DNA of 64,000 nt from positions 5,331,489-5,395,488 of the forward strand of contig CM121342.1 of the NCBI GenBank assembly GCA_051530055.1. Reading direction: 5' to 3'. Position numbers and translations under genes: made by a program. The notes under the pieces were generated by a model, which saw nothing but the letters and a program-made list of their open reading frames with translations, was not told where the DNA came from and made no database searches. Below are positions 1-61,815 of the stretch, piece by piece. The stretch is from Neoechinorhynchus agilis. Lineage: Eukaryota > Animalia > Acanthocephala. Each line of letters begins with the position of its first letter. Position 1 is the stretch's first letter.

Positions 1-2503
1 GATGAGAACTCCATATTTTTCAATAAAAATCAATGCGTGAGCGTTGTGGCCGTTATCGAAAGCAAAACTGACTTAGAGGACAATAAAAATCTGAAAAATG
101 GGCAACAGAAAAAAAGAGGATTGAACATGACTGAACTTCGACTTCATTTGCCCATAGAGTGACATCGTACATGTTAGCAAGTTGCCTCATTAGATTTCTT
201 GCAATAAGATCGGCTCTTCCTATTAGGATACTAAGGAAACGTTTGAACACTTCTCTTATTAAATTGAACTCTTCTTCGTTAACATCGACAATCCTTGCCA
301 TACGAATGCCACTTGAAAGCCATTCTAGAAACCAGTGGGATCGACAAATAACAAGTTCAAGAGAATTTAAAACTCGAAGATACGCCATCTCTTCTTTTGC
401 GTATTTTGTAAGAAATGTATCGCCTATTAATGCATTAAGACGTTCTTGATGTCTTTTGACTGCATCGTCGTCCATCGTTTGATGAAGAGCAAGTGCACTT
501 CGTGTTTGTGACAAAACTAGAGAATTGAGGCTCTTTTGGTCAATCGCTTGAGCTTCCTTGTCGTTCTTCGTCTCAATTTCAAGCACTTTTACCTCGAGAT
601 CACGAATTTCTCGCTCTTTCTGTTTCACTAAAAACCTGAACTTGTTCATGGTTTCCTCCTTGTCGACCAAAGTGTACTTAAGCACTTCCACTTGTCTATC
701 ACTAGTCGCTAATTTTGCCTTAAAAGTATCCACCTGCTCTTTTAGACGAAGATTCTCCTCGTTAATGGTCTCAGTGATTTCGTTGTCCACTTCACACATC
801 GCATTAAGGTCGTTTAAAGCGGGAGATACTCGTTAATGGAACACACACCTTCATCATCCCATAAAAAAGGAAGGACTTTAAAGGAAGAGGAAACAGTTTT
901 TCCATTCTTTTCAACGACGAGAAATTTGTGTTTAAAAAAGGCAAATCAAAGCGTTTTTCATCAAATTGAATCTAACAAAAATATACAACTCACAGCCGAG
1001 CGATACGGCTCATAGAAAGTGACCAAATACTTTGAACCTAAATCAAAGTTTAATTTCTGATAGAAAAGAGTTAAAGAGCGACATTAAACCAGTACATTTA
1101 AAGTATCTCCTGCCAGAATTGTTCATTTAACTCCGATATTTTGTCTTCTAAATTGAGGTTTCTATCTGTAAGGACTGCAACCATTTTCTCTGCTCCCAGG
1201 CAGGCATCTGACTGCTCTTTTAGATCGCGATTAGTTTTCTCAAGATCATCGACTTTCTGACTTAGACTTTCGTTTATCTTCACAGTTGCCTGTAAGTCGC
1301 TCTCAAGACCATCAACCTTCTTTTTGAACGCTTCCATCTTTCTTCGGTCATCTATAGCATTATTACGGAGCTGCATCAGCGCATCACTCATTCTAACAAT
1401 CTTTTCTTGTTGTTCTTCGTATTTTTGGGACATTTCAAGTTCACCATTCGCACCACTGCCCTCTTGGAGTTTATAGACTTCCATTTGTAATTTCACTTCT
1501 TCTAATTCGCGCTCAAGCTCTGCATTCTTGATTTCGGCAATCTCAAGTCGTTCCTCTGCCATCTCCTTATCGACAGTTATACATTCAATCTGCTCTTCGG
1601 ATGAACTCATTTCATTTTTATAAGTCTGATACTCAAGCTCAATTCTCTGTCGCTGACTTTCAGTTTGGTTCAATTTATCCGAAAGCTGGGCCAAGTGGTC
1701 CTTTGCTTCTTCTTTATATTTCTGTAGCTGCTCCAACTGAAGCTTTAACCGTTCAAATCCTTTCATCGATTCCTTGTATTCGTTAAGCTTATTTTCAAGC
1801 CCGCCCTTGACAGATTCTAACTCGGCTACCCGTTCACGGAGTGCACGGACGTTTGTTATCTCTTCGGGGGTCGTTTCTTCACCGCCATATTTCGTTTGGT
1901 CGTTCGAAGTAGAATCAGAAGCATCGGAATCATTGATAAGATTTTGGGCTACTGCGGGAGGGTAGAGGCGATCCTCGTCGTCGTCCTCCTCCTCCGTTTT
2001 CGGACTCACTTGAGTTTTTTTCAATGACCGTACTGAAAGCTTCGAAATACGACTATGAGGTTTTAGAGTTCTTTGTGAAGAGATATTGCTCGACTTTTCA
2101 GAAATTTGATTATATCGATGATTTGAATCGGAATTTATGGACCGGCGGCGGGGGGACCTCTGAACAGCGCTCCAAAAAAGTCTAACAAGGAAAACTAATA
2201 ATTATTGGGATTATATTTTAGTGGTTTTTTTCAACGATGGCGTATGTTCAAAAAACCCAATAAAAATCATCGATTAGGCGAACGAGATCGTTTTACTTGG
2301 GATGATTTTACAAATATGCCATGAAAAGGTTCACATTCAAAGTATTTTGTTCCCCCGACGCTTCCATCATTTCGTCCGAGCGGAACATTAAGAATAACGC
2401 CGATCCATTGACCGTTTGCGAATTCAGTTTCTCCAATGAATGCAACAACGCCCTGACCTTTATTTCCGACCGTCACCCGGTCGCCAATATTAAATTTATC
2501 CAT
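1..2503 (-). CDS. DCTN1: Dynactin subunit 1 (p150Glued), 5' part; runs off the left edge. ATG 2503, canonical GT-AG intron after KSSQ, non-canonical junction 813-1113, canonical ~40-nt intron near 90-130
   Basis: CAP-Gly motif GETEFANGQWIGVILNVPLGRNDGSV..KYFEC; long coiled coil with VDKEMAEER and EKMVAVLTDRNLNLEDKI motifs typical of p150Glued. Confidence 0.93.
813..1113 (-). other. Predicted non-canonical GC...AA intron (301 nt) closed by a terminal stem
   Basis: In-frame stop in the upstream exon; no single in-phase GT/GC-AG pair found; arms GCAGGAGATACT / AGTATCTCCCGC pair 11/12; spacer TTTAAA. Confidence 0.7.
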
Positions 2504-2764
2504 CAAACAAAAATCAATCACATTGATTTTAAGGGGAAACGTTACACGGAAGAAACATAGACTCAAATCCTTTTAAAATTCGACTAATTGCAAGTTTGGA
2601 AAAAGGTGTTTGGGTTTTCGCTATTCCTCCCCAACTAAAGAAAAAAGTTGGATCGTAGGACGTGAGGAAAGAGATCCGCTAATAAGGAACTTTCCAAAAA
2701 CAACCGGATTCATTCGAGTGTTTAATTCAATAAGCTGAAGAAAAGCCGTGGCTATATCTCTGAG

Positions 2765-3613
2765 ATGGAAATGAATAAGGACGATGAGAAGTTCTGGGAT
2801 GAATTGAACGTTGACATGGAAGCGCCCAAAAGTATGGCTGAATTGTTTTGTACGATGAACCAATTGCTAAAGGACACACGAACCCGATCATCGATTCGAG
2901 AACGTATTTGTGATTTTGTACTATCAAAAGTCAAGTCATACCATTTTCCGAACTTCACTTTTGATCTCGTCAATATTTTTTCTCCGATACTGTTAACAAT
3001 GATTTATCGCATTAGCGATGACCGAGAACAGATTACAGCTCTCAATGCGATCAATCACATCGTTAAAGAATGTACCTCTGAAGCCGTTCATAAGTGTAAT
3101 CATGCCGACCTTTTTTATGATGCATTGACAAATTCAAGCCAATTAAATCAATATTCCGCTGGAAGGTCGCCTCAAATTCTCCGTCAATTCCTTTTAACGG
3201 CACAATCGATGCTTACATCATCATCATCATCAATGTGCTGGTTCAATGCGTCCGAGAAACGATTGGAATTACTGAGGTCACTGAGTGATTATGTTCGATT
3301 TGAAATGAAATTCGCAACAAGGCTTGTTGGCTACGAAAACGTTCTTTTGTTGCTCAATGAAGTGGGAAATGACATGATTTTTGTGAGAAAATCGCTGTTT
3401 GATCTTGTTTACGAGAACTTGAATGTCCTTCGTCGCGGTGACCAGGATGAAAGAAGCCGACGTGAAATTGAGCTTTTAATCATGATTGTTAGAAAGCTTT
3501 TTGAAGCGCCAATTGCTCAACATGGTTTAGAATGGGATCGCTACTGCGAGATTAGAGAATTAGTTACTGAATGGGATTTCGCCAGAGAAATTGTGGCTCA
3601 TTCTCAAAGTTGA
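2765..3613 (+). CDS. HEAT-repeat protein, TTI2 (TELO2-interacting protein 2)-like, intronless
   Basis: 282-aa ORF; SDDREQITALNAINHIV...NHADLFYDALTN resembles the recalled TTI2 segment DDYQTENKILGVHCLHHIV...RAQVLYHALSN. Confidence 0.6.
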   Translation: MEMNKDDEKFWDELNVDMEAPKSMAELFCTMNQLLKDTRTRSSIRERICDFVLSKVKSYHFPNFTFDLVNIFSPILLTMIYRISDDREQITALNAINHIVKECTSEAVHKCNHADLFYDALTNSSQLNQYSAGRSPQILRQFLLTAQSMLTSSSSSMCWFNASEKRLELLRSLSDYVRFEMKFATRLVGYENVLLLLNEVGNDMIFVRKSLFDLVYENLNVLRRGDQDERSRREIELLIMIVRKLFEAPIAQHGLEWDRYCEIRELVTEWDFAREIVAHSQS

Positions 3614-3726
3614 GTAGGATAAAGATTGTGTTCCCAGACTGACCTTGTCCACATTAACAATCAAAATAACAGTTTATTTTTTAAACTACACTTTTTTGTT
3701 TCAATCAGTGTTGTTGACTAATTTTC

Positions 3727-4900: not shown

Positions 4901-5517
4901 TAAAATTCTCGATTTTGCATCATTTCATGCTTGTCCTAATTATGCCCTAATTAACATCATTGTTTTGATCAAGACTGGAACTAATTTAGATCTTATTGGC
5001 TACACCCTCTCTAATAACGGTCGATTTGTACGTAAGATGCAATATCATTCGCTCGTTTAATCGGCTTATATAACTAACAGACTTACCACTTTTTAAAAAA
5101 TATTCACTCTTGCGATTCTATATTCGTTGCATTAAAATAGAGAACAATCGGATATGAGCGATTATGCCTCTCTTTTTTTTAATAATCATTGAAACATTCC
5201 TAAAAGTATTTTAAAAATTGGAAATCTTTTTTAGGTCTGCATTTGGTAAATAATTTTTTTTATCAAAAACGTTCCGAATCACGAAGGGTTAAAAAAAGGA
5301 TTTATTGGGTAAAGACCTAAACATTAATCCTAACCTCACATATCGACATTTTAAAAATATGATGTATTGCACCTTAATTTTATACTTTTATTTTATAAAA
5401 TTAAGAACAATGAAGCTTCTTACACAGCTCAAAAATTTAGAAACAATTAATAATGTTTGTTCTATTGTTTCCCGTGTGGTAATTCATCTAACTTATTTCT
5501 TTTCTCATTTTCAGAAA

Positions 5518-12968: not shown

Positions 12969-13022
12969 AACTACAATAAACGAAACTGTCCAGTGCTAAA
13001 AAAACCAACTTAAAGTTTGTAT

Positions 13023-15492
13023 TTATTGATCCGGAAACAAACAATCTAATATGTGCATCTTTTCATAGAGTTTTTTAATCCTTGCCGAATGTCGTTCATT
13101 ATAGGCCAATAATTTTTCCGATAAAGGTTCAACCAATAATTGACCAGCTTTACCAGTTGCAAGAATTCTAATCAGTACTTCTTGGGCATAAGCACTCTGT
13201 GAAGCGAGTGTGTTCCAATCAGCAACAAATTCAACCAACTTTCCGCATTCTGATTTCAGCTCCGGGTTAAACACTAACTCCTGGATTATTCTATCGAATT
13301 GGCCCGTCTCCTGATCAGCTATCATCTCCTTTACTATGTTAAGAGCCTGCCTTCTTCGTCCAAGTCTTAAACAAGCCAGAAGTGCTTTCTCACGGGAAGC
13401 ATCCTTCAAATCAGCATCGATTTCATCAGAAACCTGTTGCTTTCTTTTTTCAATTAACAACCGCTTATACTCCGACAAAAGACACTCAATAGTCCATACA
13501 TTTCCACTCGCCTTATCCACCACTATTTTGCAATCTTCTTCAGCTTCATTAAATAAAAGATAACGTCTAGTCGCATCGATTATTGATACAATCATCTTCC
13601 CGATACCAACATTCTCACACTTTCGAGCGTCAAACACTCGAAATAAAGTCGATCTTTGGTTTGTAAGTTCGTCAGAGGCGCTGTCATCCATTATCTCGGC
13701 GATTAGAATGCATCCTATCGAAGTCATAAAACTGGCACCTATTGCCCATCCGGTGCACTCGATCGTTAAATAAGAACAATGTTCGTGAATTCCTTCATAA
13801 ATACGAACTTCACTTTTCTTCTTTTTTGAATTAAGAAGCATCAGAAGCTGAACGGTTTGATGTGAAGAGAAACTGAGTTGTTCAATGGTATACCCGGCAT
13901 CGATCTTTGTGAAGGAATTTGGTTTCTTAGCTTTCTCCGTCCATGTCCACACTTCATTGGACGAAGCTACTGCGATTGTCAGGGGATTCATTTTCCGAAA
14001 AGCAAACGTGTTCATTATGTGTGACAATTGAAGAGATTGAATGCAAGTCCCTACTATGTTCGTGGTACATTCGAACACTTTTAAGTTTGCCTTGTGGTCA
14101 AGAGTCACTAATGAATCGTTTCTGGTAACAGCTAATTCAAGTACCGTCGATCACGTAGAAGTATACGAAATCAATCATTATTGATACATTTAAGTCGGTG
14201 AAAAATGATCAATTGTACTATAATTACTTTAGGCGATGTGGTTCTAAGAACTTGACTAAAGCAAATGGGTCTAATTATTTGCAAAAAAAGTCTCCTTTCA
14301 TAATCTTTAGGGATCGGCGATTCTTGTGATTTAAAGCAACTATTTGCGTCTCGTGTATTTTGACCAAATCCAAATGTTCATTGGGACCATTTAGGTTCAC
14401 GCGGCACATTTTTCCACACTTAGTTCCGACCAGCAGCAATTCGTTTTCGTTCACATGAGCACACGAAAACTGTGCTTTGAAGCATTCGGCAATTAGTGTA
14501 AGATTATTCATGTCATTTATGAATATTCGATTCTGAGTTAAAACGAGCACTTTAGAATTCCCCAACGATATACATTCGATCAATTCATCAGTGTGTGCCA
14601 TAAATGGAACATTTCCGAATCGACCTAGACCATATTTATCGATTCTAATTATTGTTGACTCATTTGAAACCGCGAATTGTAACGGTGCTGAGTGTGATAT
14701 CTTCTCAACAAGTCCAACATCATTGAACACATATTCATGAACGCTTCCAATCACATGCACGTTTGTGTCTTGATATCTTACCAGCAGGATTTCATCGTTT
14801 TCTTCGGTACAGTAAATGATGCTCGGATAAGCACATTTTTGCTTCCATAGATAGATTGTCCCATCCACGCATCCGAAAACGATATCAGCTTCTAAATGTG
14901 CCATGGATAAAACCCGATTTCCTGAAAAGTGTCGCAACTCCTTCATTCCCTGGTCAATGTCATACTCAAAGAGTGTCCCCTGCTCATGAGCGACGTAAAA
15001 ACTCGTTGATCCGGCATAAAGACCACAAATCGGCCCATGGTCACTATTGTTAATTACTCGGAAACAAGCTTTCGATTGCCATAGTCTAACTGTACCTTCA
15101 GATCCAGCAGTTGCCATCACTTCAGTGGACAGTGATAGGACCGAGCGGACTATACCTCTATGCCCATGTTTCCACTGGCACAATAAATGAACTCTCTGAT
15201 CGTCCACAAATTCATAGATTTTTATGAGTCCAGAACGTCTTTGAACGGTCACCAAGCACGAATCATGGCTCCGTAGCGATACACATACAATATCACCAAA
15301 CTGTTCCGAATCATCATTGGTCAATGTTACTTGTTTAATGGAACCTTCGAAGTTGAATCGTTGGATTCGAGTTCCGTCAAAAACATACAACGAATTCCCA
15401 AACATACAAATCCGATTTTGAACAAGAGGCAGCAATGGGTCATGACGGATATTTGGTTGAAAAATTGATCGAATGTTCACTGGATTCATCAT
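13023..15492 (-). CDS. TBL3: Transducin beta-like 3 / UTP13 (WD40 + Utp13 C-terminal domain); probable 1-nt homopolymer error at 14283-14289 and a non-canonical intron at 14136-14218
   Basis: WD repeats in the 436-aa ORF; C-terminal WNT..SQSAYAQEVL and LLAYNERHSARI..LDCL match the Utp13 domain. Confidence 0.8.
14136..14218 (-). other. Predicted non-canonical GT...AA intron (83 nt) with terminal stem
   Basis: GTACAATTGATCAT pairs with GTGATCGACGGTAC 12/14 (two U.G); spacer TTGAA; phase-compatible, giving KVII/LAVTRNDSLVT. Confidence 0.6.
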
Positions 15493-15793
15493 TCTAAAAT
15501 TAATGATTGGAACCTTTTCGTGTCCTCTACGCTTTAAGGCGAGATGCGAATACGCTCTAACGGTACTGATGAACGAAAAGAACAAAATGTTTCAGAATTA
15601 GAGAGTTTGCATTTCCGACAAAAACACACACATGAGAATGTGAACATTATTTCACTCGACTTATCGACGTTCCGAGAGAAAATTCTCAATCTTCTTCAAA
15701 AATAAAAGGTTTACCGTGACAAAGGCAAGTGAGTTCGCGTGCGTATTTTAATCATTCAAATCCCATCATGTCATTTGTGAATGCTCCTTAAAT

Positions 15794-18880: not shown

Positions 18881-19035
18881 CGGACGAAATAAACAAAAAA
18901 TCAATTAATTTCGATATTTCATCCTCTACATCGTCGGAGGGAGGAAGGTGGCGAATAAAAACACTTAAACAATATTGAATTAATCAACACGATGTAGAAT
19001 ACGAAATATAGAAATTGATTTTTCTATTTCGTCCG
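18881..19035. repeat. Imperfect long inverted repeat (foldback/MITE-like), arms ~55 nt
   Basis: CGGACGAAATA..AAAAATCAATT..TCTACATCGT versus ACGATGTAGA..AATTGATTTTTT..TATTTCGTCCG. Confidence 0.7.
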
Positions 19036-29888: not shown

Positions 29889-30022
29889 ATCTCGCTTTCT
29901 AGATCGACTCCCCGATTTTTTCTCTCTCTAATTGTTCTCGATCGAAGTATCCACCTCTTAATCGATGTGCTTTGAACTTTGTGTGTTCCACGTTTTCTTC
30001 GAATAGACAAAAATCTTTGTAG

Positions 30023-33294: not shown

Positions 33295-35646
33295 TTAAAA
33301 AGGGCAATAATGGAGAACTTTCTCGTTCAGACCACGATTATCTACACCCAAATGTCTCATATAAGGATCTTGCTCAATTTCACGATCTGTTCCGTATTGG
33401 AAAAAGTGTGGAACGAGATCGCTGAGCCATTTCGGCTCTTTGACCAATGAAACATCGAATATCGTGTCGTCTTCCGATAAACTGTAGAATACAAGATAAG
33501 CCGGCGGATTCAGATTTACGTCCTTCTTATAAATCACTGAATCTTTATGAAGGGAAAACTCTTGCCCACTTAAGACGGACTCGTAGATATGCGGCCGTCG
33601 CTCTGATAGATCGCCACTTCTTTTTAGTTTAACTACATGTCGAAATAGACCTGATACAATGCATCGAAGAACGGTATCGGTAGATTCAGATGAAGAATTG
33701 GGATCAACATTTAGTTTCTCGAGTTGATTATGTAGTTGGTCTCGTATTTGGAGAGCGCGAATGCATGCTTCATGGTTGAGACCATTAGAATTGCAGAATT
33801 GTTTAGAAGGGCACGAAATGTGGAGAAATTCGGGCTAAAATCATCTTAAGACACAAAATGGCCACATCTCGTGCTTTAGATGCTGCGTTCCTTGAGAACA
33901 TCCTCATCGCGTTTAAGAGAGTAAGAAGGTCTCCTTCGGCACATGCAAAGTTCTGAACTTTTTTCGTTTGATTGATAAAAACGGCTTTGACCTGAAGCAT
34001 CGCTACAATGTCCAACATTTCAGCAACGCATCCAAACTGATCGGCTCTTAGTAACATAGCAGCACATTCCACATCGACGGGTAATTGAGCGGCCACTCGT
34101 CCTTGTGGTTCCATTAGTTCACCCGTTGTCTCATCAACGAATTTCAACGCAATGAGATTATCAAGGGCATTTATGACCGATTGAGATGGTAATTGAGTTG
34201 GTAAGTGGAACTTGCAAACGTTTTGAACTCCTAGAGATAACAATTGGAGCAGAAATCGACTAAGGTCCATTCTACATATTTCTGGTAAATTAAACGGTTT
34301 CAAGCGTATTGATTTGGTATAGAGACGATAGCATACACCTGATCGAATTCGTCCAGCGCGACCTGCACGTTGATCGGCTATATCTTTGCTTACTGGAACG
34401 GTAATGATTGTCTCGAATCCATATTTGTCCGCAAATCGTTGCTTTTAAGTCGCGAGCTCTTAACTGACGAAGAGTATACCCTAAACCTACTAATTTCGTC
34501 TATTCAATGGATTTTTGTCTGAAAACTCTTATGGATGCGACCCTCCCCCCGCTCGGCCGAACGAAACTGAAAAAAAGAAACGCGCGCGCGACCAATAGTG
34601 AATCCGGAATCGACGACGAACACAATATCAGGCACCGTAACGGACGTTTCTGCGATGCTAGTAGACAGCACAACTTTTCTCACCCTTTGATTCCTGCGTC
34701 GTTCAAATACCAAAGACTTTTTGTGTCGACTTAAGCAGGCGTACAAAGTCAAAGGTTGCATCTTCATTTGAACAAGTGGACGATTCTGGGCGACATAATC
34801 AGTTAGAAGAGTGAAAACTTCTTTAATTTCTGATTGTCCTGGCAAAAAACAAAGAATTCCTCCTGGATCATCCGGATTACTTTCATGGATATGAATGATT
34901 GTTAAGAAAGACGCTCTTACATAATCAGCGACAGGTCTTTCGACATGGAGAATTTGAACTCGGTACTGCCTTCCATCGACCTTCAAGCGAACTGCCATGT
35001 TTTCCGATCCACCATTGAAATAGTCCATAATTTCCTCGGAATTCAGGGTAGCTGACGTAAGTACAACACGAAGCTTATTAGTTTGAGACGACAGTATTTT
35101 TTTAAGAAGTGCGATCGATAGATCGATATCACAGCTACGCTCATGGACCTCATCTATGGAATGATTTCGAACCTTAAGCTTGTTCAAAATCATAGCTACC
35201 ATGATAACTTGAAAGGTGTCGTCCATCGATGGGCTCCGAACAAACGTTCTCAAAAGCATTCCAACAGTCATGTAAGTGATTCGAGTGTTCTTAGAAAGTC
35301 TTTGTTCGTTCCTGATCGAATATCCGATTTCTCCAAGATTCTCTTTGCGCTGACCAGCCACGTATCCAGCCAAAGTGACCGCTGCCATTCGACGAGGCAC
35401 TGCGACTACAATATTCTCATAACCGGCATCAAGGAGGAATTGAGGCAATTGGGTACTCTTTCCCGATCCGGTCTCACCCACGACCACAACTACGCGATAA
35501 TTCTCCACAAGGTACAGGAAATGATCACGGTGCTTCAAAATGGGCATCGAACTCCATTCAGATCCAAATTTATCGTCAGTCACTTCATCGCCTGATTTGT
35601 GGTCCACGTAATGACGATCAATCAATAGTGATCGGGAATCATCCAT
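33295..35646 (-). CDS. DHX35: DEAH-box RNA helicase, DHX35-like; three structured insertions/introns
   Basis: GETGSGKSTQLPQFL, DEVHERS, TSATL, FLPGQSEI, STSIAETSVT, QRAGRAGR, FFQYGT near the C-terminus. Confidence 0.8.
33802..33874 (-). other. Predicted GC...AA hairpin intron (73 nt) flanked by the direct repeat TCTAAA
   Basis: GCACGAGATGTGG / CCACATTTCGTGC 13/13 paired in RNA (one G.U); in-frame stop; removal gives RNAASKQFC. Confidence 0.6.
34444..34592 (-). other. Predicted GT...AA hairpin intron (149 nt)
   Basis: GTCGCGCGC / GCTCGCGAC 8/9 paired; spacer TTAAA; removal gives VVDSGFTIEQRFADKYG. Confidence 0.55.
35155..35199 (-). other. In-frame 42/45-nt hairpin insertion inside Walker B (motif II); probable non-canonical intron
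   Basis: ATGATTTTGAAC / GTTCGAAATCAT 12/12 paired in RNA; separates VIM(V) from DEVH; the GT-AG reading (46 nt) is out of frame. Confidence 0.6.
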
Positions 35647-35774
35647 ATGTAATCTAAAATATTCAATAAACCAATCGAACCATCCATATGCGATCCAAAG
35701 ACTAGAAAAAAAGGAAAATCAAACCGATCATAAGAACGAGAAAATTTAGTCGGAAATCGACCACAGGATTGCAC

Positions 35775-37400: not shown

Positions 37401-37618
37401 TTCGGAACTTTGAACTCTTTGATATTAGAAGCCAATCTTTTTGTGATTACCTTTTGGAAATGGCATTCTTTGAGCAGCAATAATGATAGTTAATTTTGTA
37501 GGTTGTTTCCTTTATTGTGGGCAAACTCGCAGTTTCTTAATTATGTGCCGCTTTTGCTTTTTAAATTCTCGAGCATTAAAGTCAAATCGTTGTCGTTGCT
37601 GTAGATATTTGAAATCGA

Positions 37619-38867
37619 ATGGGGAAGGAAAGGCCTGGTTATTTAACTGCCAAGGCTATTTCAAACCGCATGAAAGCCCGAGGCCTACAGAAACTTCGCT
37701 GGTATTGCCAAATGTGTCAAAAGCAATGTCGAGACGAAAACGGTTTCAAGTGCCACACCAATTCTGAGTCTCATCAGCGGCAACTGATGATAGTGTCCGA
37801 ACAACCTGAGCGATTCATTAACGATTTCTCAAGAGAGTTCCATCGTGGTTTTATGAGTACCGTTCGTCGTATTTATGGCACGCGGCGAGTGGAAGCGAAC
37901 ACTGCTTATCAGGAGTACATCAGAGATCGCCACCACATCCACATGAACGGAACCCGTTGGACTACTCTTACTGGATATGTCCAATTCCTGGGAAACACTG
38001 GACAGTGTATAGTTGACCAATGTGAAGACAAGTGGTACATTCAGGCAATACCAAACGATCCCGAACACATTCTCAATTCTGAAAGGACTTTAAGAAGAGA
38101 TAGAACCAGGTTGAACGATTCTGAACGGGAAAGACGTTATATCCAGAAGCAAATGGAACTGGACAGAAAAAGGCTGGAGGACAAGGGCATAGGTGCACGT
38201 GTAGAAGAAGTGAAGGAGTTTTGTGGATCGGCTAATATTCATCTGAAACTTGCGAAGAAACGGAACTCGGATTTTGCTTTGATGCCTTCCATCTCACTTG
38301 AAGAAGATAAACGAGCTAAAAAGGAAAAGAACATTGAGAGTGTTCGTAGGTCCGCACTTGATGATATTATAGCTGATGAGGAACATAAACGAAGAAGAGA
38401 ACGGAGATTGGTGTGGTTAACGAAAGGTATTGTTGTTAAGATTGTTGATGCTGATGATGGAAATTATCCAGAGTTTAATTCGGTGATCCGTATTAGATGA
38501 ACACTGGATACTTAGTATGGTCGATAAGAAAGCAGTAGTTGAGAAAGTGTCTCAGTTCGAAGCATTGCTACAACCTCTTAGAGCGAATGGGCAATTTTTA
38601 TCGGCGAAAAACAGTATTGATCATCCTAATTGGTTTCATCAGGATCAGTTAGAGACAGTGATTCCTTCGATCGGTCGCCTGGTCAAAATTGTCAATGGCG
38701 CCTACTGTGATTCCGTGGCTACTTTAACAAAGGTTAATCGACTAAACTATTCGGCAAATGTGGTTATTAGCCATGGACCATTAAATGGACGAAAAGTCGA
38801 GAATCTACCGTTTGAGGATATTTCCAAGTTATACCACGACGAAAGCTTTGAACGGAGTTGGAAGTAA
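37619..38867 (+). CDS. KIN: KIN17 DNA/RNA-binding protein, 2 exons (43-nt intron GTTTAA..CTTAG)
   Basis: KARGLQKLRWYCQMCQKQCRDENGFKCH..SESHQRQ; QDQLETVIP; FEDISKL. Confidence 0.95.
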
Positions 38868-39722
38868 TTGTATTTAACGAATTTCAGTGTGCGTCGTTTG
38901 TGAGTCGGTCATTAGGTCATCCTTACACATTGAGGCATTCCGTTTAATTCGAATATTTCCCAAACTGGCCACTTTTGCATTTTAGCTTACGTGCAGAGCC
39001 TCTTTAAATCGTTCACTCTAATCTCAGAGATCGTGATGAAGTAATCGTACTTCGATTTTATCCCGTAGCCAACGACTCTAGAATCATATCGAGTGAAAAT
39101 CCATCGGGATGGTGAATTTGGACTTGTACCGTTTTATTATTCGCGAAATATTTCGAAAGAGGAAGCCTCTCCTTATCAATTGGAAGTAGCGAACCTGTCT
39201 ACATAGGAATAACAATAACCAAAAACCTTTTTAGATGATTATGAAGCTGCGAGGTTTCCTCTAATGGCACCGATTCTAGAATCTCTCACCTCCAAACTGA
39301 AGCTTCGCAACAAACGCCGTTTGAAATTAAGTTTGCTCGTTGGAATTTTGCACTTTTGGTCTTTAAGCGCAATTATACCTTTTTTTTAACTATCTCTTGT
39401 ATCTTTAGTGTTCAAGAGGAACTTGGGGACGGATGCACCTCATCAACAAAACAAGAAGCGAGCGGAGTCGATTCGCGAATGTTGTGACCTGTTTGTGTCT
39501 CCTCACACATTTTAGATTGCTTCTGAAGCAGTAAAACGGCGAAAGCTTGGCAAATAAATCAACTATATCTATAGGTCGTACAAATGTCAAATTGAAAACT
39601 TTATCGAATAAGATTTCGTCTTGGCTGTCCCGATTTTACTCGTTGATTTTAAACATTGCATTTTTAGTTTGCTGGATCGACAAACCCCCCCCGTGCCCAT
39701 TGAACGCATAATTAAGCAAATT

Positions 39723-41508
39723 TTAAGAATGTGAGTTTAAACGAGTTTCGCTGGACGACACATCGACAGTACCATAATAATGTGAATAGACGGATTTGAC
39801 TCCTTTTAAAAATGCTAACTGTAATCCAAACTGCAACGTTAGAAATCCAAATCCTTTGAATAATCCGAGTGTTCCCTCGGTTGCTCTTTCGCCAAGGAAA
39901 CATCGATATAGACAATCAATAGGTCCAGTATAGTTATAGATTATAGGAAGATAACATTTGGCTGGCGAGGATGCATTCCAGTTATCGATTATAGATCTGG
40001 TGCCTTGTACTAATAGGCGACAAAGGATAGTTTCTAGTGGATACGTTAAGCACTCGGTCATGAAACAGTCGACAATTTCAAGTTTCGAAGAGCGATACAG
40101 TGTATTTTGAGAGTTTTGTGTGTTTTAAAAGATTCTGGTATGCTCTTTGCCAGAATATTTTTTTTGTAGATAAAGTCTTCTCGAGTGTTTCTATTCGCAT
40201 TTTCTTTGGTAGAGAAAAATCGTTGTAAGATGGGTGAGACGAATGAGGATACCAATGAGCGAGATGCAAAGTATGAAGCAGTTACGAGCATCAAGTAATG
40301 GACGGGGTATGGTCGAGCGAAGACGGGAAGGCTGTTGGACGAAGTGAATGGAGTTATGAGTCGATTTAAAGTATCCGTGAGTACGGTCACAAAGTCGGCT
40401 ACATCGACGGTCGCTTGACTCTTGTTGTTCAAAAGTAGACTTAAGAAATTTATAGAGGCGAAAGACGAACCTGAACGCATGTGTAGATGTGCATCGCATA
40501 GAGTGGAGAGGTCAGAGCGGTCGATATTGTGTAACTCGTAAAGATTTTAAGTCGGTCGATTACTCTTAATGAACGAAGAATTGCTCAATAGAAGACTGCA
40601 GTGACGGAAAATAACCTGTTATCGTCTCTCTTGCTTTCAAACAACAAGTTATAGATTGATTCTCGAACCATGAGTTCAGTTCCGGTAAAGATGTGGTATG
40701 TCGCCATCGATGATAAATTAATCGTCCCTTTTGACTAGAAATTCAGGCAATTAGCCAAACTAAACTGATTTCTCGCCAAAAATAATCTTATTGTCGGAAT
40801 AATAAAACTGGAGAGATTAATAGTTTTTCTATTTAAGATATGCACAAATCATCAAGGCAAAATCCTTCGGAATGATGGAGTTGGAAATGTGGAGATCATA
40901 AACCGCCGCCCGGGTAGAAAATATTTTGAAATCGGAAGTCTCGCTTCATCATTCATTGTCTGATAATTGATTAAAATATTTTCTATTCTTCGGATTATGA
41001 TCACCACATCTCTAACTCTTCCAAACAAATTTTTATCGGTGATTAATGACTAGAAATGTGTTTATCGATTGAGAAATTGTTAAGAAAGCCATGTGATTGT
41101 GAGAGACGCCTAAACTGTATCCCGTGGCCAATTTCGAAAACAAAAACTTTTTTCCTAACGGCTCTAACAACTTACAATTGAACGGATCAATGTCTGGCTC
41201 GTTACTTTTAAAGCATCCAAAGGAGTCAAGTGGAATGCGGTTGATCCATCATTGACCTAAATACCGAAACAAATAATTTGGCTTAGACTGTCAAATACCT
41301 GTATTTGATGTCTTAGAGACTTAAATGGAAATACAAGAACGTATTTGGAGATGGTTCTATAAGAGACGAGACATCTAATTGAGAAAGGGACGAAGTTTTT
41401 TAACCTGGCTGCAAAATAGACGACCTCTGCAGTTGAATCAAGAGAATGATGTTCCTGGTACTTCGGTCCTCTGATTGGCATATTTCGGACTTCGTATAAG
41501 CCAGCCAT
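39723..41508 (-). CDS. SLC25A46: Mitochondrial outer-membrane carrier SLC25A46, multi-exon
   Basis: VLVFPFKSLRHQIQ/VN..FHLTP, SPLYA..TCVQ/S, YPLETILCRLLVQGTRSIIDN, GLFKGFG. Confidence 0.85.
40083..40150 (-). other. Predicted GC...AA hairpin intron (68 nt)
   Basis: Frame change between two conserved segments with no usable AG; CAAAGAGC-ATAC pairs with GTATCGCTCTTCG; removal gives YKKNIL/LEIVDCFMTECLTYPLET. Confidence 0.55.
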
Positions 41509-51900: not shown

Positions 51901-54900
51901 CAAAATCCACCGCTTTTTCCAGCAAATGCAACTTATCTTCTTCAATCTCAATCATCTCGTCAATTTGAGGTGTTATTAACTTAATATCTGTCAGAGTTGC
52001 ATTTCGCACAAGCATTGATTCCTTTTGCGTCGTCGTAAGAGGTATGGAACTCCTCACAAAGTCCGAAATCATGTCATGTCGTACTTTATCCTGCGGATGT
52101 CGACGTCTAACAATGTTTGAGACTTTTTGACGATTCTCTAGATCGTCAAGTAAATCGAGTTTGTGAATCATCGCACTGACAAGTTCATTTATCTGCGCAT
52201 CATCGTCCATTTGTCCGTCCCGAGAATCTAACTTCTCAACTTCCGCCTCACGGTGCATTGCCTCCTTTGAAATTGCATCGGAAGTTTTCAATTCTGCCAA
52301 TGGTTCTTCGACCAAATCACGTTCAAAATCGATAGTCTCGCTCTTTTCTAAAGAAGATTCCGTATGCTTATCCATATCACCTACTTCCTTCAGTAAAACT
52401 TCCTCGTTTACTTCAGCTCCCATCTTCTCAGAAACTAAAGAACCCGAAATGTCTTCCTCTCGATGAATCAATGATTCGGTTGTAGTTAAACTAATAGGTT
52501 CCTTTATCATTTCATCCTTGGATTCACCGTCTTTGTGGTATTCAGCTGGTTCCAGAAATTTGCCTTGATTTAACCATTCATCCTTCGTCTGTTCTACTTC
52601 AATTTGATCAGACTTCCTCAAATGCCCTCTTTCAACAATATCCGGCTCCTTTAAATGCCCTCTTTCAACAATATCCGATTCCTTCAAATGTCCTCTTTCA
52701 ACAAAATCCGATTCCTTCAAATGTCCTCTTTCAACAAAATCCGAATCCTTCAAATGTCTCCTTTCAACAATATCCGAATCCTTCAAATGTCCTCTTTCAA
52801 CAAAATCCGAATCCTTCAAATGTCCTCTTTCAACAAAATCCGATTCCTTCAAATGTCCTCTTTCAACAAAATCCGAATCCTTCAAATGTCCTCTTTCAAC
52901 ATCCTCATCCAGTAGTTCATCATCACCAGAATCAGATTCCTCGAATTGGACTCTCTCAACGAAATCTTCCATTGATTGGTCCTCGGGGTGTTCCACCTTT
53001 GGCGAAACCGATTCTTTGAACGGGATTTCTTCGATTGCCTTGTCTGATATTTCATCTGCGGCTTGTTCCACCTTTGGCAAAACTGATTCTTTGAAGTGGA
53101 TCTTTTCGATAGCTTTGTCTGATATTTCATCAACCGCATGTTCCACCGTTGGCGAAACCGATTTTTTGAGCGGGATCTTTTCGATTGCCTTGTCTGATAT
53201 TTCATCAACCGCCTGTTCCACTTCTGGCGAAACTGATTCTTTGAACTGGATCTTTTCGATTGCCTTGTCTGATATTTCATCAACCGCATGTTCCACCTCT
53301 GGCGAAACTGATTCTTTGAACTGGATCTTTTCGATTGCTTTGTCTGATATTTCATCAACCGCCTGTTCCACCGTTGGCAAAACTGATTCTTTGAACTGGA
53401 TCTTTTCGATGGCTTTGTCTGATATTTCATCAACCGCCTGTTCCACCGTTGGCAAAACTGATTCTTTGAACTGGATCTTTTCGATGGCTTTGTCTGATAT
53501 TTCATCAACCGCCTGTTCCACCTCTGGCGAAACCGATTTTTTGAACGGGATCTTTTCGATGGCTTTGTCTGATATTTCATCAACCGCCTGTTCCACCTTT
53601 GGCGAAATCGATATTTTGAGCGGGATTTCTTCGATTGCCTTGTCTGATATTTCATCAACCGCCTGTTCCAGCTCTGGCGAAACTGATTCTTTAAACTGGA
53701 TCTTTTCGATTGCCTTGTCTGATATTTCATCTACGGCCTGTTCCACCTTTGGCGAAATCGATATTTTGAGCGGGATTTCTTCGATTGCCTCGTCTGATAT
53801 TTCATCTACGGCCTGTTTGACCTTTGGCGAAATCGATTTTTTGAACGGGATTTCTTCGATTGCCTCGTCTGATATTTCATCTACGGCCTGTTTGACCTTT
53901 GGCGAAACCGATTTTTTGAGCTGGATTTCTTCGATTGCCTCGTCTGGTAGTTCATCCACTGCCTGTTCCACCTTTGGCGAAACGGATTTTTTGAACGGGA
54001 TTTCTTCGATTGCCTTGTCTGATATTTTATCTACGGCCTGTTCCACCTTTGGCGAAACCGATTTTTTGAACTGGACTTCATAAAAAATCTCTGTCTCTTC
54101 TTCTTTATGAAGAACACTAACCATTTCTCCGTCAAGCTCTTTGGCACGTGCCACACGTTCAAATTTCAATTTACTCTTCATTCTTTTCATTTCACATTTC
54201 CGGGCCTGTTTCAACGCCAAAATCCCCCGACTAACTGTCTCCAATACTGGATCCAGCTGAGAAGCATCAATATCTCCCATTTCTCTCTTCAATGCAACCC
54301 ATCTATTTTTCATTTCCTCGGCTTTCAGCAGTCGTCTTCCCTCCTCTTCTAATCTCTTTATCATAGCTCTATCAAGTCCTGGCAACTCTTGATCATCGCC
54401 ACTTCGAGAGTCGAGCACACTTTCGGCTTGAGCTACATTCCCAAACCTCATGAGCCTTTCCAATTGGTCCATTAGACTTAAATCTGTTTTCAGCATCTCG
54501 ACTGACTTTTCCTTGAAATTGGACGTAAACGGTTTTCGAATATGCTTCCTAGTTATGGTTGTCAAATCCACTTTTTCGAGCTTTCCATAGGTAAGATAAT
54601 TCCGGTAGGCTCGATCGGAAATGAGCTTAAGGTCCCTCATAAATCTGACATGATCTTGATCAAAATCGATTCCTTGCGCAAAGTCAAATAGATCCTTTCC
54701 CGTTAACCCCGACGGTCGTCTCGTTAGAAAATCTTTGATCTGAGAATGCTTAGCAATAACCTGTTCTGCTTTTTCCAGTTTTAAACCGGAAACGAGCAAT
54801 TCATCGAATTTAATGAGACTGACCGCCACTCTGTCCTTGATCGCACTCGACATATCGAATTTTTCTATAAAGCCATAATTTTCGATTGGTTTAATTAATT

Positions 54901-58302: not shown

Positions 58303-58397
58303 GTATATAAAACAAAAAATGATTTTTCATCTTTTTTTGTCGACCGGTTCGCGTTGTTGTCATGGATACTTCACTCTTTCTCTATGTAAGCAGAAAA

Positions 58398-59312: not shown

Positions 59313-59729
59313 GACCATGTTTAGAACAAAAAAACTCGTCCATTTGATAAGTTTATATCCATGGAGGTCTTTTCACTTTTGTTTCGCTTTCCCTCTCATA
59401 CTAGAGAGAAGTCGCTTTGTTAGCTTGTCCTCAAAAATCAAACTTCATCCGAACGTCCGTTCGTTCCTCAATTCGGCGAGTAAATGGGGAAGGGCATCCG
59501 GTCGTATACCCCTGCGCCAATTTGTATCCTTACAAATCTTTCCAATCGAGATTCCTATTTTTTTAGGTGATAACAAAGAAAAGGACTCATGTATCTTTAA
59601 TCTTTTTTTGATGACGACATTTGTGCTATTGTTTTTGGTTGTTGTCTTCTATTCTTTCTTCCGGATCAATTCGAATTTGGAGGTTTGAGCCGTGTGGGGA
59701 AGAAAGGTACAAACGCGTGTAAAATATCG

Positions 59730-60182
59730 ATGTCCTATCGCTTGTTAGCAGCGGCTGGTTTGGCTGTAGCTGGTTTTGCAGCATATTGCGCCTATTTTGA
59801 CTATCGACGGCGTTCAGCCCCTGATTTTCGAAGAAAGCTTAAGGAACGGCGAGCACGTCAACAAAAAGAACGATCTACCGTAAAGTTAAGTTTTGATTTA
59901 AATGTCCCGGCTCTCTCGGACCCTAGGGAGATGCAACGCTTTTTTGAACAACATCTTATGGACGCGGATGCAGCTTTAGGTGACGGTGATGAAGATTTGG
60001 CTGCTCAACACTATGCAGTAGCTGCCATTTGCAGTCCAATGCCCGAAAAATTGGCCGAAATTGTATCATCCGCCGCTGGCAGTGAAATGGCCGAGAAAAT
60101 GAAAGGATATTTCCCGTTGGTTCAACGACAAATAACAAAAACTCTAATGGAACGTGGAACTTTGATCCGCCGCCCGTCATAG
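59730..60182 (+). CDS. TOMM20: Mitochondrial import receptor TOM20
   Basis: AGFAAYCAYFDYRRRSAPDFRRKLKERR; P.LSDPREMQRFF. Confidence 0.92.
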   Translation: MSYRLLAAAGLAVAGFAAYCAYFDYRRRSAPDFRRKLKERRARQQKERSTVKLSFDLNVPALSDPREMQRFFEQHLMDADAALGDGDEDLAAQHYAVAAICSPMPEKLAEIVSSAAGSEMAEKMKGYFPLVQRQITKTLMERGTLIRRPS

Positions 60183-60344
60183 TGACTCGCCGCGTCTACT
60201 GTTCTCGCCCTTTTGTTTGGCAAAAATAAAACATCCGATTCTTGCCGTGTAATAGTTCAATCATCTCCAAATTCTTTAGAACGAGTACGCGAAAGAACCA
60301 GTTTGTTTGAGGGAAACTTCGAAAAAAAACCCGGATCTACATTG

Positions 60345-61815
60345 ATGGACGAGATTAGGAAGGACCGCAGGTTTCGTCATGTTTTCCAGGATCCGATGTT
60401 CCGTCCCGTTCCAAGATCGATTCACAAGTCGAAGCTTGACGATCGATTCAAGTCCGTTTTGAGTGACGATTCGTTTCGGTCTTATCCGTCGAACAAGGAC
60501 GCACGAGGCGCAAAAAGACTCAAAAGTGAAATCGATAACCTTGATCGATATTATGACTTTGACGCCCACAAAGCCACTAAGAACACCGTGGATTCGAATC
60601 GTAAAAAAGAGAAAAAGGGACGTTTAAAACGTAAAAATCGTCAAAAAAGTAGCCCAGGGGAGATTGCTTTGGAGCAGGAGGAAAGCGTCGTTCGCAATGA
60701 AGGTGCTTATCAACGGTTGGCCATTTGTGGAATGGATTGGGACTTTATAACGGCAAAAGATTTGTTCGTGGCGTTGGCGTCGGTCGTCGAAGACGACGGG
60801 TGCCTTGAGAGCGTCAAGATTTATCCTTCTCAGTTTGGTTTGAAGGAAATGGAGAAGGAAAAATCAAGCGGTCCAAACATAAAAGTAAGTACCGGCTCCC
60901 TAAAAGATGATTTCGATCAATATCGAATAATTGACGAAACGGAAGCAGAAAAGGCGGAAACGGAAGCGCTAATGCATTTAGATTCTAATGGCAGCTTAAT
61001 AAGTCTCGTAAGTACGCTTTTTGGAGACATTTGCGTCTTGTAAATTGTTTTTTTGAACCTTTGGCAATTTCTTAAGAATTATAAATGCCAAAAGGACCTA
61101 TCAATTAAAACGCCTTCGGTATTACTATGCGATAGCCACCGTGGATAGTGTAGCAACCGCTAAAAAGATCTACGAAGAGCTCGATGGCCAAGAATACGAG
61201 AACTCTGGAAACCGTTTCGACTTGCGATACGTGAGTGACGATATTTCATTTGATTCTGAGCCTAAAGATGAATGTATCCACTTCCCGGGCGAGGACTATA
61301 AACCCACGGAGTATTCAACCAAAGCTCTGTTCCAAACGCGAGTCGATTGTACGTGGGATGAAACTCCAAAGGAACGTCAATTGATGCTCAATCGCCGATA
61401 CGACAACCCTGAAGAAGCCCTTCAAGCATACGACGAAATCGCAAAAAAATATATAGCTTCCAGTGAAGATGGCGACGATGGCTTACTACTTGACGTAAGG
61501 GACAATTGTGGAGATGAAAAGGATGATGTTGAAGTCGAATGGGATGACGATGAACCCTCTGAACCAAAGAATAAACCCAAAGGACATCGTATGAAAATGA
61601 AACAGAAAGCCTATGAAAAATATCACAAAAGAAAAATGACCAAGGACAAAGCGGTTGACCCCGATGAAGAGGTCGCTAAGATTACAGGCGACAGTAGGTT
61701 CACAGAAATGTTCAAAGTCAGCAATTATCATATCGATCCAACATCAACCCTCTATAAGGAAACGGAAGTAATGAAAAGATTGATTTCAAGGCCCATGTCA
61801 GATGATGGCGTTTAA
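60345..61815 (+). CDS. ESF1: Pre-rRNA processing protein ESF1, 2 exons
   Basis: DRRF..V..DP.F, RLAICGMDWD.ITAKDL, VKIYPSQFG, YQLKRLRYYYA, DGQEYE..GNRFDLRY, VDCTWDET, IDPTSTLYKET. Confidence 0.93.
60974..61094 (+). other. Predicted GC-AG intron (121 nt) with terminal stem
   Basis: GCATTTA-GATTCT pairs with AGAATT-A-TAAATGC; spacer CAAAAG; removal joins EAL(M) to TYQLKRL. Confidence 0.55.

What the first reader, a model, noticed from the sequence alone, without database searches (positions are those of the whole stretch)
813..61094. A recurrent class of hairpin-closed, AG-independent (GY...AA) introns in housekeeping genes
Seen in sequence: seven insertions interrupt conserved coding regions (DCTN1 813-1113; TBL3 14136-14218; DHX35 33802-33874, 34444-34592, 35155-35199; SLC25A46 40083-40150; ESF1 60974-61094). 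In most, a GT/GC dinucleotide is the first base pair of a 9-14 bp stem (offset by 1-6 nt in two cases). The partner arm ends 3-9 nt (mostly 5-6) before a phase-compatible junction. The 3' ends are TTTAAA, TTGAA, TCTAAA, TTAAA, CGAAA, CCATA and CAAAAG, so five end in AA, one in TA and one in AG. The donors mostly lack the GTAAGT consensus, and the stems share no sequence. Ordinary GT-AG introns without such stems coexist in the same window (STX1, Grainyhead, KIN17). Established knowledge: structure-defined non-conventional introns are known in euglenids, and diverse non-canonical U2 introns in the larvacean Fritillaria. I do not recognise this GY-stem...AA geometry in an animal. Inference: a structure-guided splicing route in which the stem juxtaposes the splice sites and replaces AG recognition, possibly seeded by many unrelated TIR elements.
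Basis: partly seen in the sequence, partly recalled or inferred. Interest (0 to 1): 0.92.

Follow-up and report, generated by a model that had tools for sequence, protein, structure and literature searches.

The report
Hairpin-closed non-GT-AG introns in a worm
In the thorny-headed worm Neoechinorhynchus agilis, short hairpin-forming inserts inside essential genes are cut out of the RNA exactly, although they lack the usual GT...AG intron signals. The cut points seem to be set by the hairpin, a kind of intron known so far mainly from Euglena and a few other organisms.

Summary
Transcript contigs from four RNA runs skip four non-GT-AG, hairpin-closed segments exactly:
- 34444-34595 and 35154-35195 in DHX35
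- 40121-40164 in SLC25A46

All three reader boundaries that could be tested were wrong: two by 3 nt, and one used the wrong stem. For ESF1, 131 of 131 orthologs require Leu-Arg at the junction.

The DHX35a and DCTN1 inserts are collinear with solved human proteins, but their exact junctions are untested. TBL3 is unresolved.

True junctions lie about 3 nt outside the closing stem on the 5' side and 3 or 6 nt outside on the 3' side. They share no terminal dinucleotides. A canonical GT-AG intron and AG-dependent spliced-leader acceptors coexist with them.

The best reading is RNA-level, structure-measured excision, closest to Euglena nonconventional introns and Amoebophrya introners. The machinery is unknown.

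The scan has already noted this intron class in at least eight other windows of this genome. I found no paper describing it in Acanthocephala.

The parts
34444..34595 (-). Nonconventional intron in DHX35, 152 nt. RNA sense: UUGGUCGCG...CGCGACUUAAA. It can slide by 1 nt (TT..AA or AT..AA).
   Evidence: Skipped in contigs of all 4 RNA runs. An unspliced 211-nt contig is also present in X1. The closing stem falls in the 0.2% background tail.
35154..35195 (-). Nonconventional intron in DHX35, 42 nt, in frame, inside the Asp codon of the DEVH (DEAH-box) motif. A 12-bp stem with a 9-nt loop. The direct repeat TAG lets it slide by 3 nt.
   Evidence: Skipped in all 4 runs. Fold z = -4.2.
33802..33874 (-). 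Predicted nonconventional intron in DHX35, 73 nt, with a 13-bp closing stem. TTTAGA is repeated at both ends, so it can slide 0-6 nt.
   Evidence: The flanking exons are collinear with human DHX35 residues 557-563 with no gap. Fold z = -4.1. No collinear GT/GC-AG alternative exists. No transcript was checked.
38462..38513 (+). Nonconventional intron in KIN17, 52 nt (AA..TT or AT..TA). It has 3-nt spacers on both sides of a 7-bp closing stem.
   Evidence: Skipped in all 4 runs. The spliced CDS gives a 398-aa KIN17. Fold z = -3.0.
40121..40164 (-). Nonconventional intron in SLC25A46, 44 nt. The direct repeat ACA lets it slide by 3 nt.
   Evidence: Joint seen in X1 and X4, with matching loose ends in X2 and X3. 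The spliced frame is continuous.
60971..61091 (+). Nonconventional intron in ESF1, 121 nt (AAU-stem...stem-CAA). It can slide by 2 nt.
   Evidence: Only this removal restores L-R-x-YQL, where R is present in 131 of 131 orthologs and L/V/I/M precedes it. The gap in the Pfam RRM_ESF1 profile is 17 positions and is filled by exactly 17 residues. The public annotation is truncated here.
813..1113 (-). Insert of 301 nt in the DCTN1 coiled coil, closed by an 11-bp stem. The exact junction is unknown; 816-1116 would give 3-nt spacers.
   Evidence: The exons align to DCTN1 up to residue 459 and from residue 463, with exactly 3 residues between. No in-frame GT/GC-AG solution exists within 60 nt. No background segment had an equal or stronger end duplex (0 of 3000).
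14134..14329 (-). Unresolved interruption of TBL3/UTP13. The best single-intron, stop-free solution is about 190-196 nt, closed by CAAGAAUCGCCGAUC / GAUCGACGGUACUUG.
Evidence: RNA runs hold only 0.41-0.73 of the words of 14014-14449, which does not distinguish the two models.
39358..39407 (+). Ordinary GT-AG intron, 50 nt, with a poly-U tract and no closing stem, downstream of the KIN17 stop codon.
   Evidence: Skipped in X2 and X4. End duplex -2.0 kcal/mol, fold z = +0.65.
37603..37604 (+). AG acceptor for spliced-leader addition to KIN17. The mRNA body starts at 37605.
   Evidence: The same 23-nt leader is attached here and at DHX35.
35654..35655 (-). AG acceptor for spliced-leader addition to DHX35. 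The mRNA body starts at 35653.

Best explanation
These are nonconventional introns of Neoechinorhynchus agilis, removed precisely from pre-mRNA.

Each intron is closed by its own terminal hairpin of 7-13 bp. The exon-intron junctions lie in the short single-stranded tails just outside that helix. A 3-nt 5' spacer fits every resolved case, and the 3' spacer is 3 or 6 nt. The junctions are not at GT/AG or at any shared dinucleotide.

The hairpin brings the two junctions together and most likely acts as the ruler that sets them. This is inferred from geometry and has not been tested.

The route coexists with a normal U2-type system that uses poly-pyrimidine plus AG, seen in one GT-AG intron and two spliced-leader acceptors.

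The catalytic machinery is unknown. I lean slightly (about 55:45) toward a recognition route separate from U1/U2AF, as in Euglena and possibly an endonuclease-ligase, over a relaxed spliceosome as in Fritillaria.

An origin from foldback or MITE-like insertions is plausible but not shown.
For: - **Transcripts.** Contigs of four independent RNA runs skip 34444-34595, 35154-35195, 38462-38513 and 40121-40164 exactly. Depth is near zero in the intergenic satellite region, and spliced-leader sequences sit on the 5' ends, so the runs are RNA.
- **Unspliced form.** One is present in X1 at depth 36, against 61 for the spliced junction.
- **Protein restoration.** Removal restores conserved protein sequence: the DEVH motif, KIN17 at 398 aa, the ESF1 L-R-x-YQL motif in 131 of 131 orthologs, and collinearity with DHX35 and DCTN1.
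- **Terminal stems.** They are far stronger than the window background (0.002, 0.003, 0.010, 0.056; Fisher p = 6e-6). Yet inverted repeats are barely enriched across the window.
- **Unused canonical options.** In-frame GT/GC-AG alternatives exist near two verified introns (30 and 32 of them) but are not used.
- **3' ends.** The nonconventional introns lack the poly-U/AG ends seen at the canonical intron and at the spliced-leader acceptors.
- **Published precedent.** Comparable codes are described in Euglena (PMC12501133), Amoebophrya (PMC7789003), and Fritillaria and euglenids (review PMC11282704).
Against: - Only four junctions are transcript-verified and one is homology-fixed. Sliding (1-6 nt direct repeats) makes the '3-nt spacer' rule a fit, not a proof.
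- Blind enumeration shows that stems alone do not pick the true junction: rank 36 of 5554 for DHX35b, and tied 2nd of 4590 for KIN17.
- The runs are flagged 'RNA?', and contigs drop rare variants.
- No DNA reads from the same animals were examined.
- There is no evidence on lariat versus circle products, or on the splicing factors involved.
- No repeated element family or consistent target-site duplication was seen in the window.
Confidence: 0.8

Rival explanations
1. This is a GY...AA intron class in which GT/GC is the first base pair of the stem and the acceptor lies 3-9 nt after the partner arm and ends in AA.
For: Stems do start with G-C in four inserts, and several 3' tails are A-rich.
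Against: The ESF1 GC...AG version gives Met where 131 of 131 orthologs have Arg. Real 5' junctions lie 1-6 nt upstream of the stem. Terminal dinucleotides are heterogeneous.
Confidence: 0.03
2. The same introns are removed by a relaxed U2 spliceosome, as in Fritillaria borealis. The hairpin merely helps to pair the splice sites. This rival concerns the machinery only.
For: A working spliceosome is present: a GT-AG intron and spliced-leader trans-splicing. Fritillaria MITE-derived non-canonical introns are reported to be removed by the spliceosome (PMC11282704). The loops lie 19-27 nt from the 3' junction, a distance that would suit a branch point.
Against: There is no preferred terminal dinucleotide (Fritillaria has AG-AC and AG-AT). 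There is no poly-pyrimidine tract. The 42-52 nt introns are almost wholly base-paired. The junctions track the stem.
Confidence: 0.4
3. Insertion polymorphism. The assembly carries MITE insertion alleles, and the 'spliced' contigs are transcripts of insert-free alleles.
For: Direct repeats of 3-6 nt flank three inserts, like target-site duplications. X1 shows both forms of one locus.
Against: All four runs show the skipped form at every assessable locus, while the assembly carries the insert at all of them. The inserts disrupt essential genes, and earlier notes report them across the genome. Common null alleles at that density are not viable. Two verified introns have only a 1-nt repeat.
Confidence: 0.04
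4. Programmed DNA elimination, similar to ciliate IES excision. The inserts are excised from somatic DNA, and transcripts come from the rearranged genes.
For: The removal is precise, independent of signals, and often flanked by repeats. Earlier notes mention TA flanks.
Against: The whole-worm DNA assembly keeps the inserts. An unspliced transcript form exists. Germline cells would lack functional DHX35, ESF1 and DCTN1. TA is not present at most of the junctions seen here.
Confidence: 0.05
5. Reverse-transcriptase template switching across stable hairpins creates false deletions in the cDNA.
For: Hairpins with short direct repeats are the classic context for this artefact.
Against: The skipped form dominates (depth 61-153, against 36 or less) in four libraries. 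Retained inserts would frame-shift essential genes. Removal restores invariant residues. Two introns have only 1 nt of repeat.
Confidence: 0.03

Closest known systems
Euglena nonconventional introns (PMC12501133; review PMC11282704)
   Same: - Non-GT-AG introns with base-paired ends and junctions in short spacers outside the helix; the 3-nt 5' spacer matches.
- Frequent short direct repeats that make the introns 'slidable'.
- Coexistence with conventional GT-AG introns and spliced-leader trans-splicing.
- Suspected transposon origin.
   Different: - No CAG/CTG motif at the start of the stem.
- The 3' spacer is 3 or 6 nt rather than 5.
- The host is a bilaterian animal.
- The stems are long and unique to each intron.
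Amoebophrya introner elements (PMC7789003)
   Same: - Inverted repeats of 8-20 nt form a hairpin that joins the exon borders.
- Direct repeats of 3-5 nt overlap the boundaries.
- There is no dinucleotide signature.
- The host is a parasite.
   Different: - Amoebophrya elements form repeated families; no copies were found in this window.
- Direct repeats are present in only about half of the introns here.
- U1 status is unknown here.
Fritillaria borealis non-canonical U2 introns (Henriet 2019, via PMC11282704 and PMC13326754)
   Same: An animal in which many introns escape GT-AG. The introns carry inverted repeats and target-site duplications, suggesting a MITE origin.
   Different: Fritillaria has preferred AG-AC and AG-AT ends and an exonic TAC, and removal is reported to be spliceosomal. 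No shared ends are seen here, and the machinery is unknown.
Ciliate IES excision
   Same: Precise removal of short, repeat-flanked inserts from genes.
   Different: IES excision acts on DNA in a separate somatic nucleus. Here the insert is in the assembled DNA and in an unspliced transcript.

Membership tests
Canonical U2-type GT-AG / GC-AG introns | The intron starts with GT or GC and ends with AG, preceded by a poly-pyrimidine tract. | tested here: not met
   No verified junction allows GY...AG, even with sliding. The control intron 39358-39407 does meet this feature.
U12-type AT-AC introns | A 5' /RTATCCTT consensus and AT-AC (or GT-AG) ends. | tested here: not met
   By eye on the sequences, only KIN17 (ATTATCC) comes close, and it has an extra base. 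None of the introns ends in AC in register with an AT start.
Euglena nonconventional introns | Non-GT-AG ends with base pairing between the intron ends. | tested here: met
Euglena nonconventional introns | A 3-nt 5' spacer and a 5-nt 3' spacer. | tested here: inconclusive
   A 3-nt 5' spacer fits all five resolved introns. The 3' spacer is 3 or 6 nt, or 5 for DHX35b if the G.U pair is not counted.
Euglena nonconventional introns | CAG and CTG motifs at the start and end of the helix. | tested here: not met
   The helices start GGUCGCG, AUGAUUU, UAUCCAG, AAAA.AUUCUGG and GCAUUUA.
Euglena nonconventional introns | Base pairing is required for excision, and the machinery is not the spliceosome. 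| not testable with these tools
   This needs mutagenesis and analysis of the excision products.
Amoebophrya-type introner elements / MITE-derived introns | Terminal inverted repeats of about 8-20 nt. | tested here: met
   Stems of 7-13 bp.
Amoebophrya-type introner elements / MITE-derived introns | Direct repeats (target-site duplications) of 3-5 nt at the boundaries. | tested here: inconclusive
   The repeats are TAG, ACA and TCTAAA in three introns, but only 1, 1 and 2 nt in three others.
Amoebophrya-type introner elements / MITE-derived introns | Multiple related copies that form families. | tested here: not met
   No second copy of any insert occurs in the 64-kb window. Genome-wide copy number was not testable.
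Fritillaria non-canonical U2 introns | Predominant AG-AC or AG-AT ends after an exonic TAC. | tested here: not met
   Only DHX35c can be read as AG..AT. The others cannot.
IES-like DNA elimination | The insert is absent from somatic DNA, and no precursor RNA carries it. | tested here: inconclusive
   An unspliced contig is present in RNA run X1 and the insert is in the assembly. No DNA reads were examined.

The most novel reading that the evidence does not exclude
A bilaterian animal runs a second intron-excision system like that of Euglena. It measures junctions from a terminal hairpin, ignores GT/AG, may be independent of U1/U2AF or of the spliceosome altogether, and accounts for most coding-region introns in housekeeping genes. 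In this window, all five resolved coding-region introns in DHX35, KIN17, SLC25A46 and ESF1 are of this type.
Probability: 0.35. Interest if true: 0.93.

Novelty: new variant of a known kind. Interest (0 to 1): 0.8.

Why it matters
If this holds genome-wide, an animal lineage (Acanthocephala, within Syndermata) has independently evolved a structure-defined intron code that was thought nearly unique to euglenids and a few protists.
- It would give a metazoan system, with existing RNA-seq from 74 individuals, for asking what machinery removes such introns.
- It bears on how transposon-like insertions become tolerated inside essential genes.
- It explains why the public annotation of this genome breaks genes at these sites; ESF1, for example, is split into 256-aa and 143-aa 'hypothetical proteins'.
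- Gene sets, orthology calls and 'gene loss' inferences for acanthocephalans may be biased until a motif-agnostic annotation is made.

Tried and rejected
- **Transcript-derived proteins.** I looked for them to fix the other junctions. The databases hold only truncated NCBI models, P0001 and P0002.
- **TBL3 homology.** phmmer of the TBL3 pieces against PDB was too weak to place the junction.
- **Blind enumeration.** Listing every in-frame, stop-free removal and ranking by end-stem energy put the true solutions high but not uniquely first. Stems alone cannot define junctions.
- **Share-of-words test for TBL3.** The values 0.41-0.73 fit both the 83-nt model (expected 0.72) and the 196-nt model (expected 0.44), so it was inconclusive.
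- **Known RNA families.** Rfam and tRNA scans found nothing in the inserts or elsewhere in the window.
- **Motifs rejected by eye.**
  - Archaeal bulge-helix-bulge motif: the exon flanks do not pair with the intron ends.
  - U12 consensus.
  - A uniform TA or 9-bp target-site duplication.
  - CUUAAG as a branch site: it sits at the palindrome centres.
- **Inverted-repeat excess.** Across the window it is marginal (210 against 176 +/- 14 at k = 9). The intron-stem link is therefore specific and not a compositional effect.
- **Earlier-findings word searches.** Searches for transcript or snRNA notes returned nothing.

Full report
**Organism and context.** The window is from Neoechinorhynchus agilis (Acanthocephala), assembly GCA_051530055.1, chromosome record CM121342.1. 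The ESF1 fragment P0001 is an NCBI protein of that species at 100% identity. Earlier notes of this scan report "TA-bounded hairpin non-GT-AG inserts" in at least eight other windows of the same genome, several of them stating that no transcript check was possible. I treated those notes as leads only.

**Gene map relevant to the finding**:
- DCTN1 on the minus strand at 53-2566. Its CAP-Gly exon is at 2267-2566.
- TBL3/UTP13 on the minus strand at 13023-15585.
- DHX35 on the minus strand at about 33298-35646, 694 aa.
- KIN17 on the plus strand, starting at 37619, 398 aa.
- SLC25A46-like carrier on the minus strand at about 39700-40480.
- TOM20 on the plus strand at 59685-60182.
- ESF1 on the plus strand at 60213-61815.

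**Transcript evidence.** Four runs of one 2025 study hold 63-69% of the sampled words of 34300-40299. They are flagged "RNA?" and are probably the individually sequenced worms of PMC12690905.

Laid on that stretch, their contigs cover the genes at depth 50-170. Depth falls to about 0-15 over the intergenic satellite region at 35841-36839. Their 5' ends carry one shared 23-nt leader, so the runs behave as RNA.

The contigs show five joints:

| Joint | Skips | Runs | Gene |
|---|---|---|---|
| 34443>34596 | 152 nt | all four | DHX35 |
| 35153>35196 | 42 nt | all four | DHX35 |
| 38461>38514 | 52 nt | all four | KIN17 |
| 40120>40165 | 44 nt | X1 and X4, with matching loose ends in X2 and X3 | SLC25A46 |
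| 39357>39408 | 50 nt, canonical GT..AG | X2 and X4 | downstream of the KIN17 stop |

In X1, a 211-nt contig at depth 36 retains 34444-34595, beside the spliced junction at depth 61. Insert-bearing precursor RNA therefore exists.

- *DHX35b.* The intron is 34444-34595, not 34444-34592.
- *DHX35c.* It is 42 nt, not 45 nt. The transcript form gives IMVDEVHER, which keeps the hydrophobic residue before the DEVH motif. The junction lies inside the Asp codon of that motif.
- *SLC25A46.* The removed segment is 40121-40164, closed by AUUCUGG/CCAGAAU.
Its only coding-region intron is nonconventional.

**Inserts without transcript data.**

*ESF1.* The Pfam RRM_ESF1 profile is matched up to position 89 by the upstream piece and from position 107 by the downstream ORF. 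The 17 missing positions are filled by exactly 17 residues if 121 nt are removed.

An exhaustive HMMER search returned 150 relatives. In the 131 that contain the YQLxRLRYYY motif, the residue two positions before Tyr is Arg in 131 of 131. The residue before that is Leu, Val, Ile or Met in 131 of 131.

Removing 60971-61091 (which can slide by +2) gives EALRTYQL. The GC-AG alternatives add 4-6 residues and put Lys at the Leu position.

*DHX35a.* The exon pieces align to human DHX35 (PDB 9s2f) through residue 557 plus five residues, and then from residue 563. Because TTTAGA occurs at both ends, the mRNA is identical for shifts of 0-6 nt.

*DCTN1.* The pieces align to DCTN1 211-459 and from 463, with exactly three residues between them. 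No in-frame, stop-free GT/GC-AG solution exists within 60 nt. The exact junction cannot be set by homology.

*TBL3.*
- The best of 2925 single-intron, stop-free solutions is a segment of about 190-196 nt (about 14134-14329) with a -14.8 kcal/mol closing stem.
- Against that solution, a KFLEP-like peptide in the skipped part argues for a more complex structure.
- RNA runs hold 0.41-0.73 of the words of 14014-14449 and never all of them. Something is removed, but the models cannot be separated.

**Stems.** I compared the duplex energy between the first and last 20 nt of each transcript-defined intron with 3000 random same-length window segments.

| Intron | Fraction of background with an equal or stronger duplex |
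|---|---|
| DHX35b | 0.002 |
| DHX35c | 0.003 |
| KIN17 | 0.010 |
| SLC25A46 | 0.056 |
| ESF1 | 0.024 |

The Fisher combined p for the four transcript-defined introns is 6e-6. The canonical intron has no closing stem (-2.0 kcal/mol). Whole-intron fold z-scores are -3.0 to -4.2 for the three short introns.

Perfect inverted repeats within 400 nt are barely enriched across the window, so the association is specific to these introns. No insert has a second copy in the window.

A caution applies. Stems cannot replace transcripts.

**Geometry.**

| Intron | Unpaired nt, 5' / 3' | Sum |
|---|---|---|
| DHX35b | 2/4 or 3/3 | 6 |
| KIN17 | 3/3 or 2/4 | 6 |
| ESF1 | 3/3 to 1/5 | 6 |
| DHX35c | 2/7 to 5/4 | 9 |
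| SLC25A46 | 3/6 to 6/3 | 9 |
| DHX35a (predicted) | 0/9 to 6/3 | 9 |
| DCTN1 (predicted) | sum only | 6 |

The only 5' spacer that fits all five resolved introns is 3 nt. The 3' spacer is then 3 or 6 nt. The introns with a sum of 9 are the ones with direct repeats of 3 nt or more (TAG, ACA, TCTAAA). With only five introns this is a fit and not a proven rule.

The 3' ends lack the poly-U plus AG found at the canonical intron and at the two leader acceptors.

**Mechanism.** What is shown is precise RNA-level absence of the inserts, and a terminal helix at a near-fixed small distance from the junctions. What is inferred is that the helix juxtaposes the junctions and measures their positions.

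The rivals can be weighed as follows.
- *Insertion polymorphism* is very unlikely. The assembly carries the insert at every locus, while all four animals express the skipped form. The inserts disable essential genes at a density of at least seven per 64 kb.
- *RT template switching* fails for the same reason: functional protein is needed. The skipped form also predominates.
- *Somatic DNA elimination* is disfavoured by the unspliced transcript and by the germline's need for these genes. It is not excluded without DNA reads.
- *The machinery* is open. A relaxed spliceosome (the Fritillaria precedent) is about as likely as a separate structure-reading route (the Euglena precedent). I lean slightly to the latter because poly-Y/AG recognition is clearly retained for canonical sites yet absent at these introns.

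**Literature.**
- Neither N. agilis paper mentions introns (PMC12690905 and PMC12256650).
- Full-text searches for acanthocephalan or rotifer non-canonical introns found nothing relevant.
- The closest published systems are the Euglena nonconventional introns, with 3-nt and 5-nt spacers, CAG/CTG, essential pairing and 84% slidable introns (PMC12501133).
- Next are the Amoebophrya introners, with 8-20 nt inverted repeats, 3-5 nt direct repeats and a hairpin that joins the exon borders (PMC7789003).
- Fritillaria has AG-AC and AG-AT ends and a proposed MITE origin (PMC11282704).

**Verdict.** This is a real and significant intron class, here backed by transcripts. I rate it a new variant of a known kind, apparently undescribed for this phylum.

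Noticed in passing
window 35653 (minus strand) and 37605 (plus strand): The same 23-nt sequence, GAATATTTAAAAACTTACAAGCA, is attached to the 5' ends of the DHX35 and KIN17 transcript contigs, immediately after genomic AG acceptors. Variant leaders appear in X1 and X3. This looks like spliced-leader trans-splicing, and from memory the leader resembles the bdelloid rotifer one. My one full-text search found no paper reporting it for Acanthocephala. The leader gene is not in the window.
   Followed up: partly
window 60279-61040 and 61384-61812 (L001:10001-11669): The public annotation splits ESF1 into two 'hypothetical proteins' of 256 aa and 143 aa. The first reads into the insert and stops there. 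The second half of the RRM is left unannotated.
   Followed up: yes
window 2108-2279, minus strand: A further candidate hairpin-closed insert lies in DCTN1, between the CAP-Gly exon (ORF 2267-2566) and the next exon. Its arms (ATCGATGATTT...AAATCATCGAT) are 29 nt long, with flanking TA on both sides and a -23.5 kcal/mol end duplex, the best of 4324 in-frame solutions. Canonical GT-AG alternatives also exist here, for example GTAAAAC at 2296.
   Followed up: partly
window 39358-39407 and 38867-39700: A canonical 50-nt GT-AG intron downstream of the KIN17 stop codon is spliced in only 2 of 4 runs. KIN17 contigs run on into the 3' end of the convergent SLC25A46 gene, so the 3' regions overlap or transcription reads through.
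   Followed up: no
window 39684: The X1 transcript contig has one more C than the assembly in a C8 run in the SLC25A46 3' UTR. This is a homopolymer length error or a polymorphism.
   Followed up: no
window 14275-14300: TBL3 has an in-frame TAA immediately after a T7 run. An assembly indel, a tiny intron and a larger intron cannot be told apart.
   Followed up: partly
window 40878-41018; 18876-19040; 5230-5321: These are long, imperfect inverted-repeat pairs with arms of 28-32 nt. The first lies about where the X1 SLC25A46 contig should end, by its length. The last overlaps the start of the SNF-transporter ORF. They may be further foldback elements or introns.
   Followed up: no
window 35841-36839; 29375-29890; 52618-54075: Three tandem arrays are present. 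A 77/147-nt satellite lies between DHX35 and KIN17 and explains the spurious ORFs at 36163-37138. A 102-nt unit is repeated 5 times. Repeats of 33 nt and 75 nt lie inside the 1848-aa ORF.
   Followed up: no
L001:16832-19882 (about 3-6 kb beyond the window end): The public annotation splits a DEAH-type helicase into a 687-aa gene (DEAD...HA2) and a 222-aa gene (OB_NTP_bind). This is probably another unrecognised nonconventional intron.
   Followed up: no
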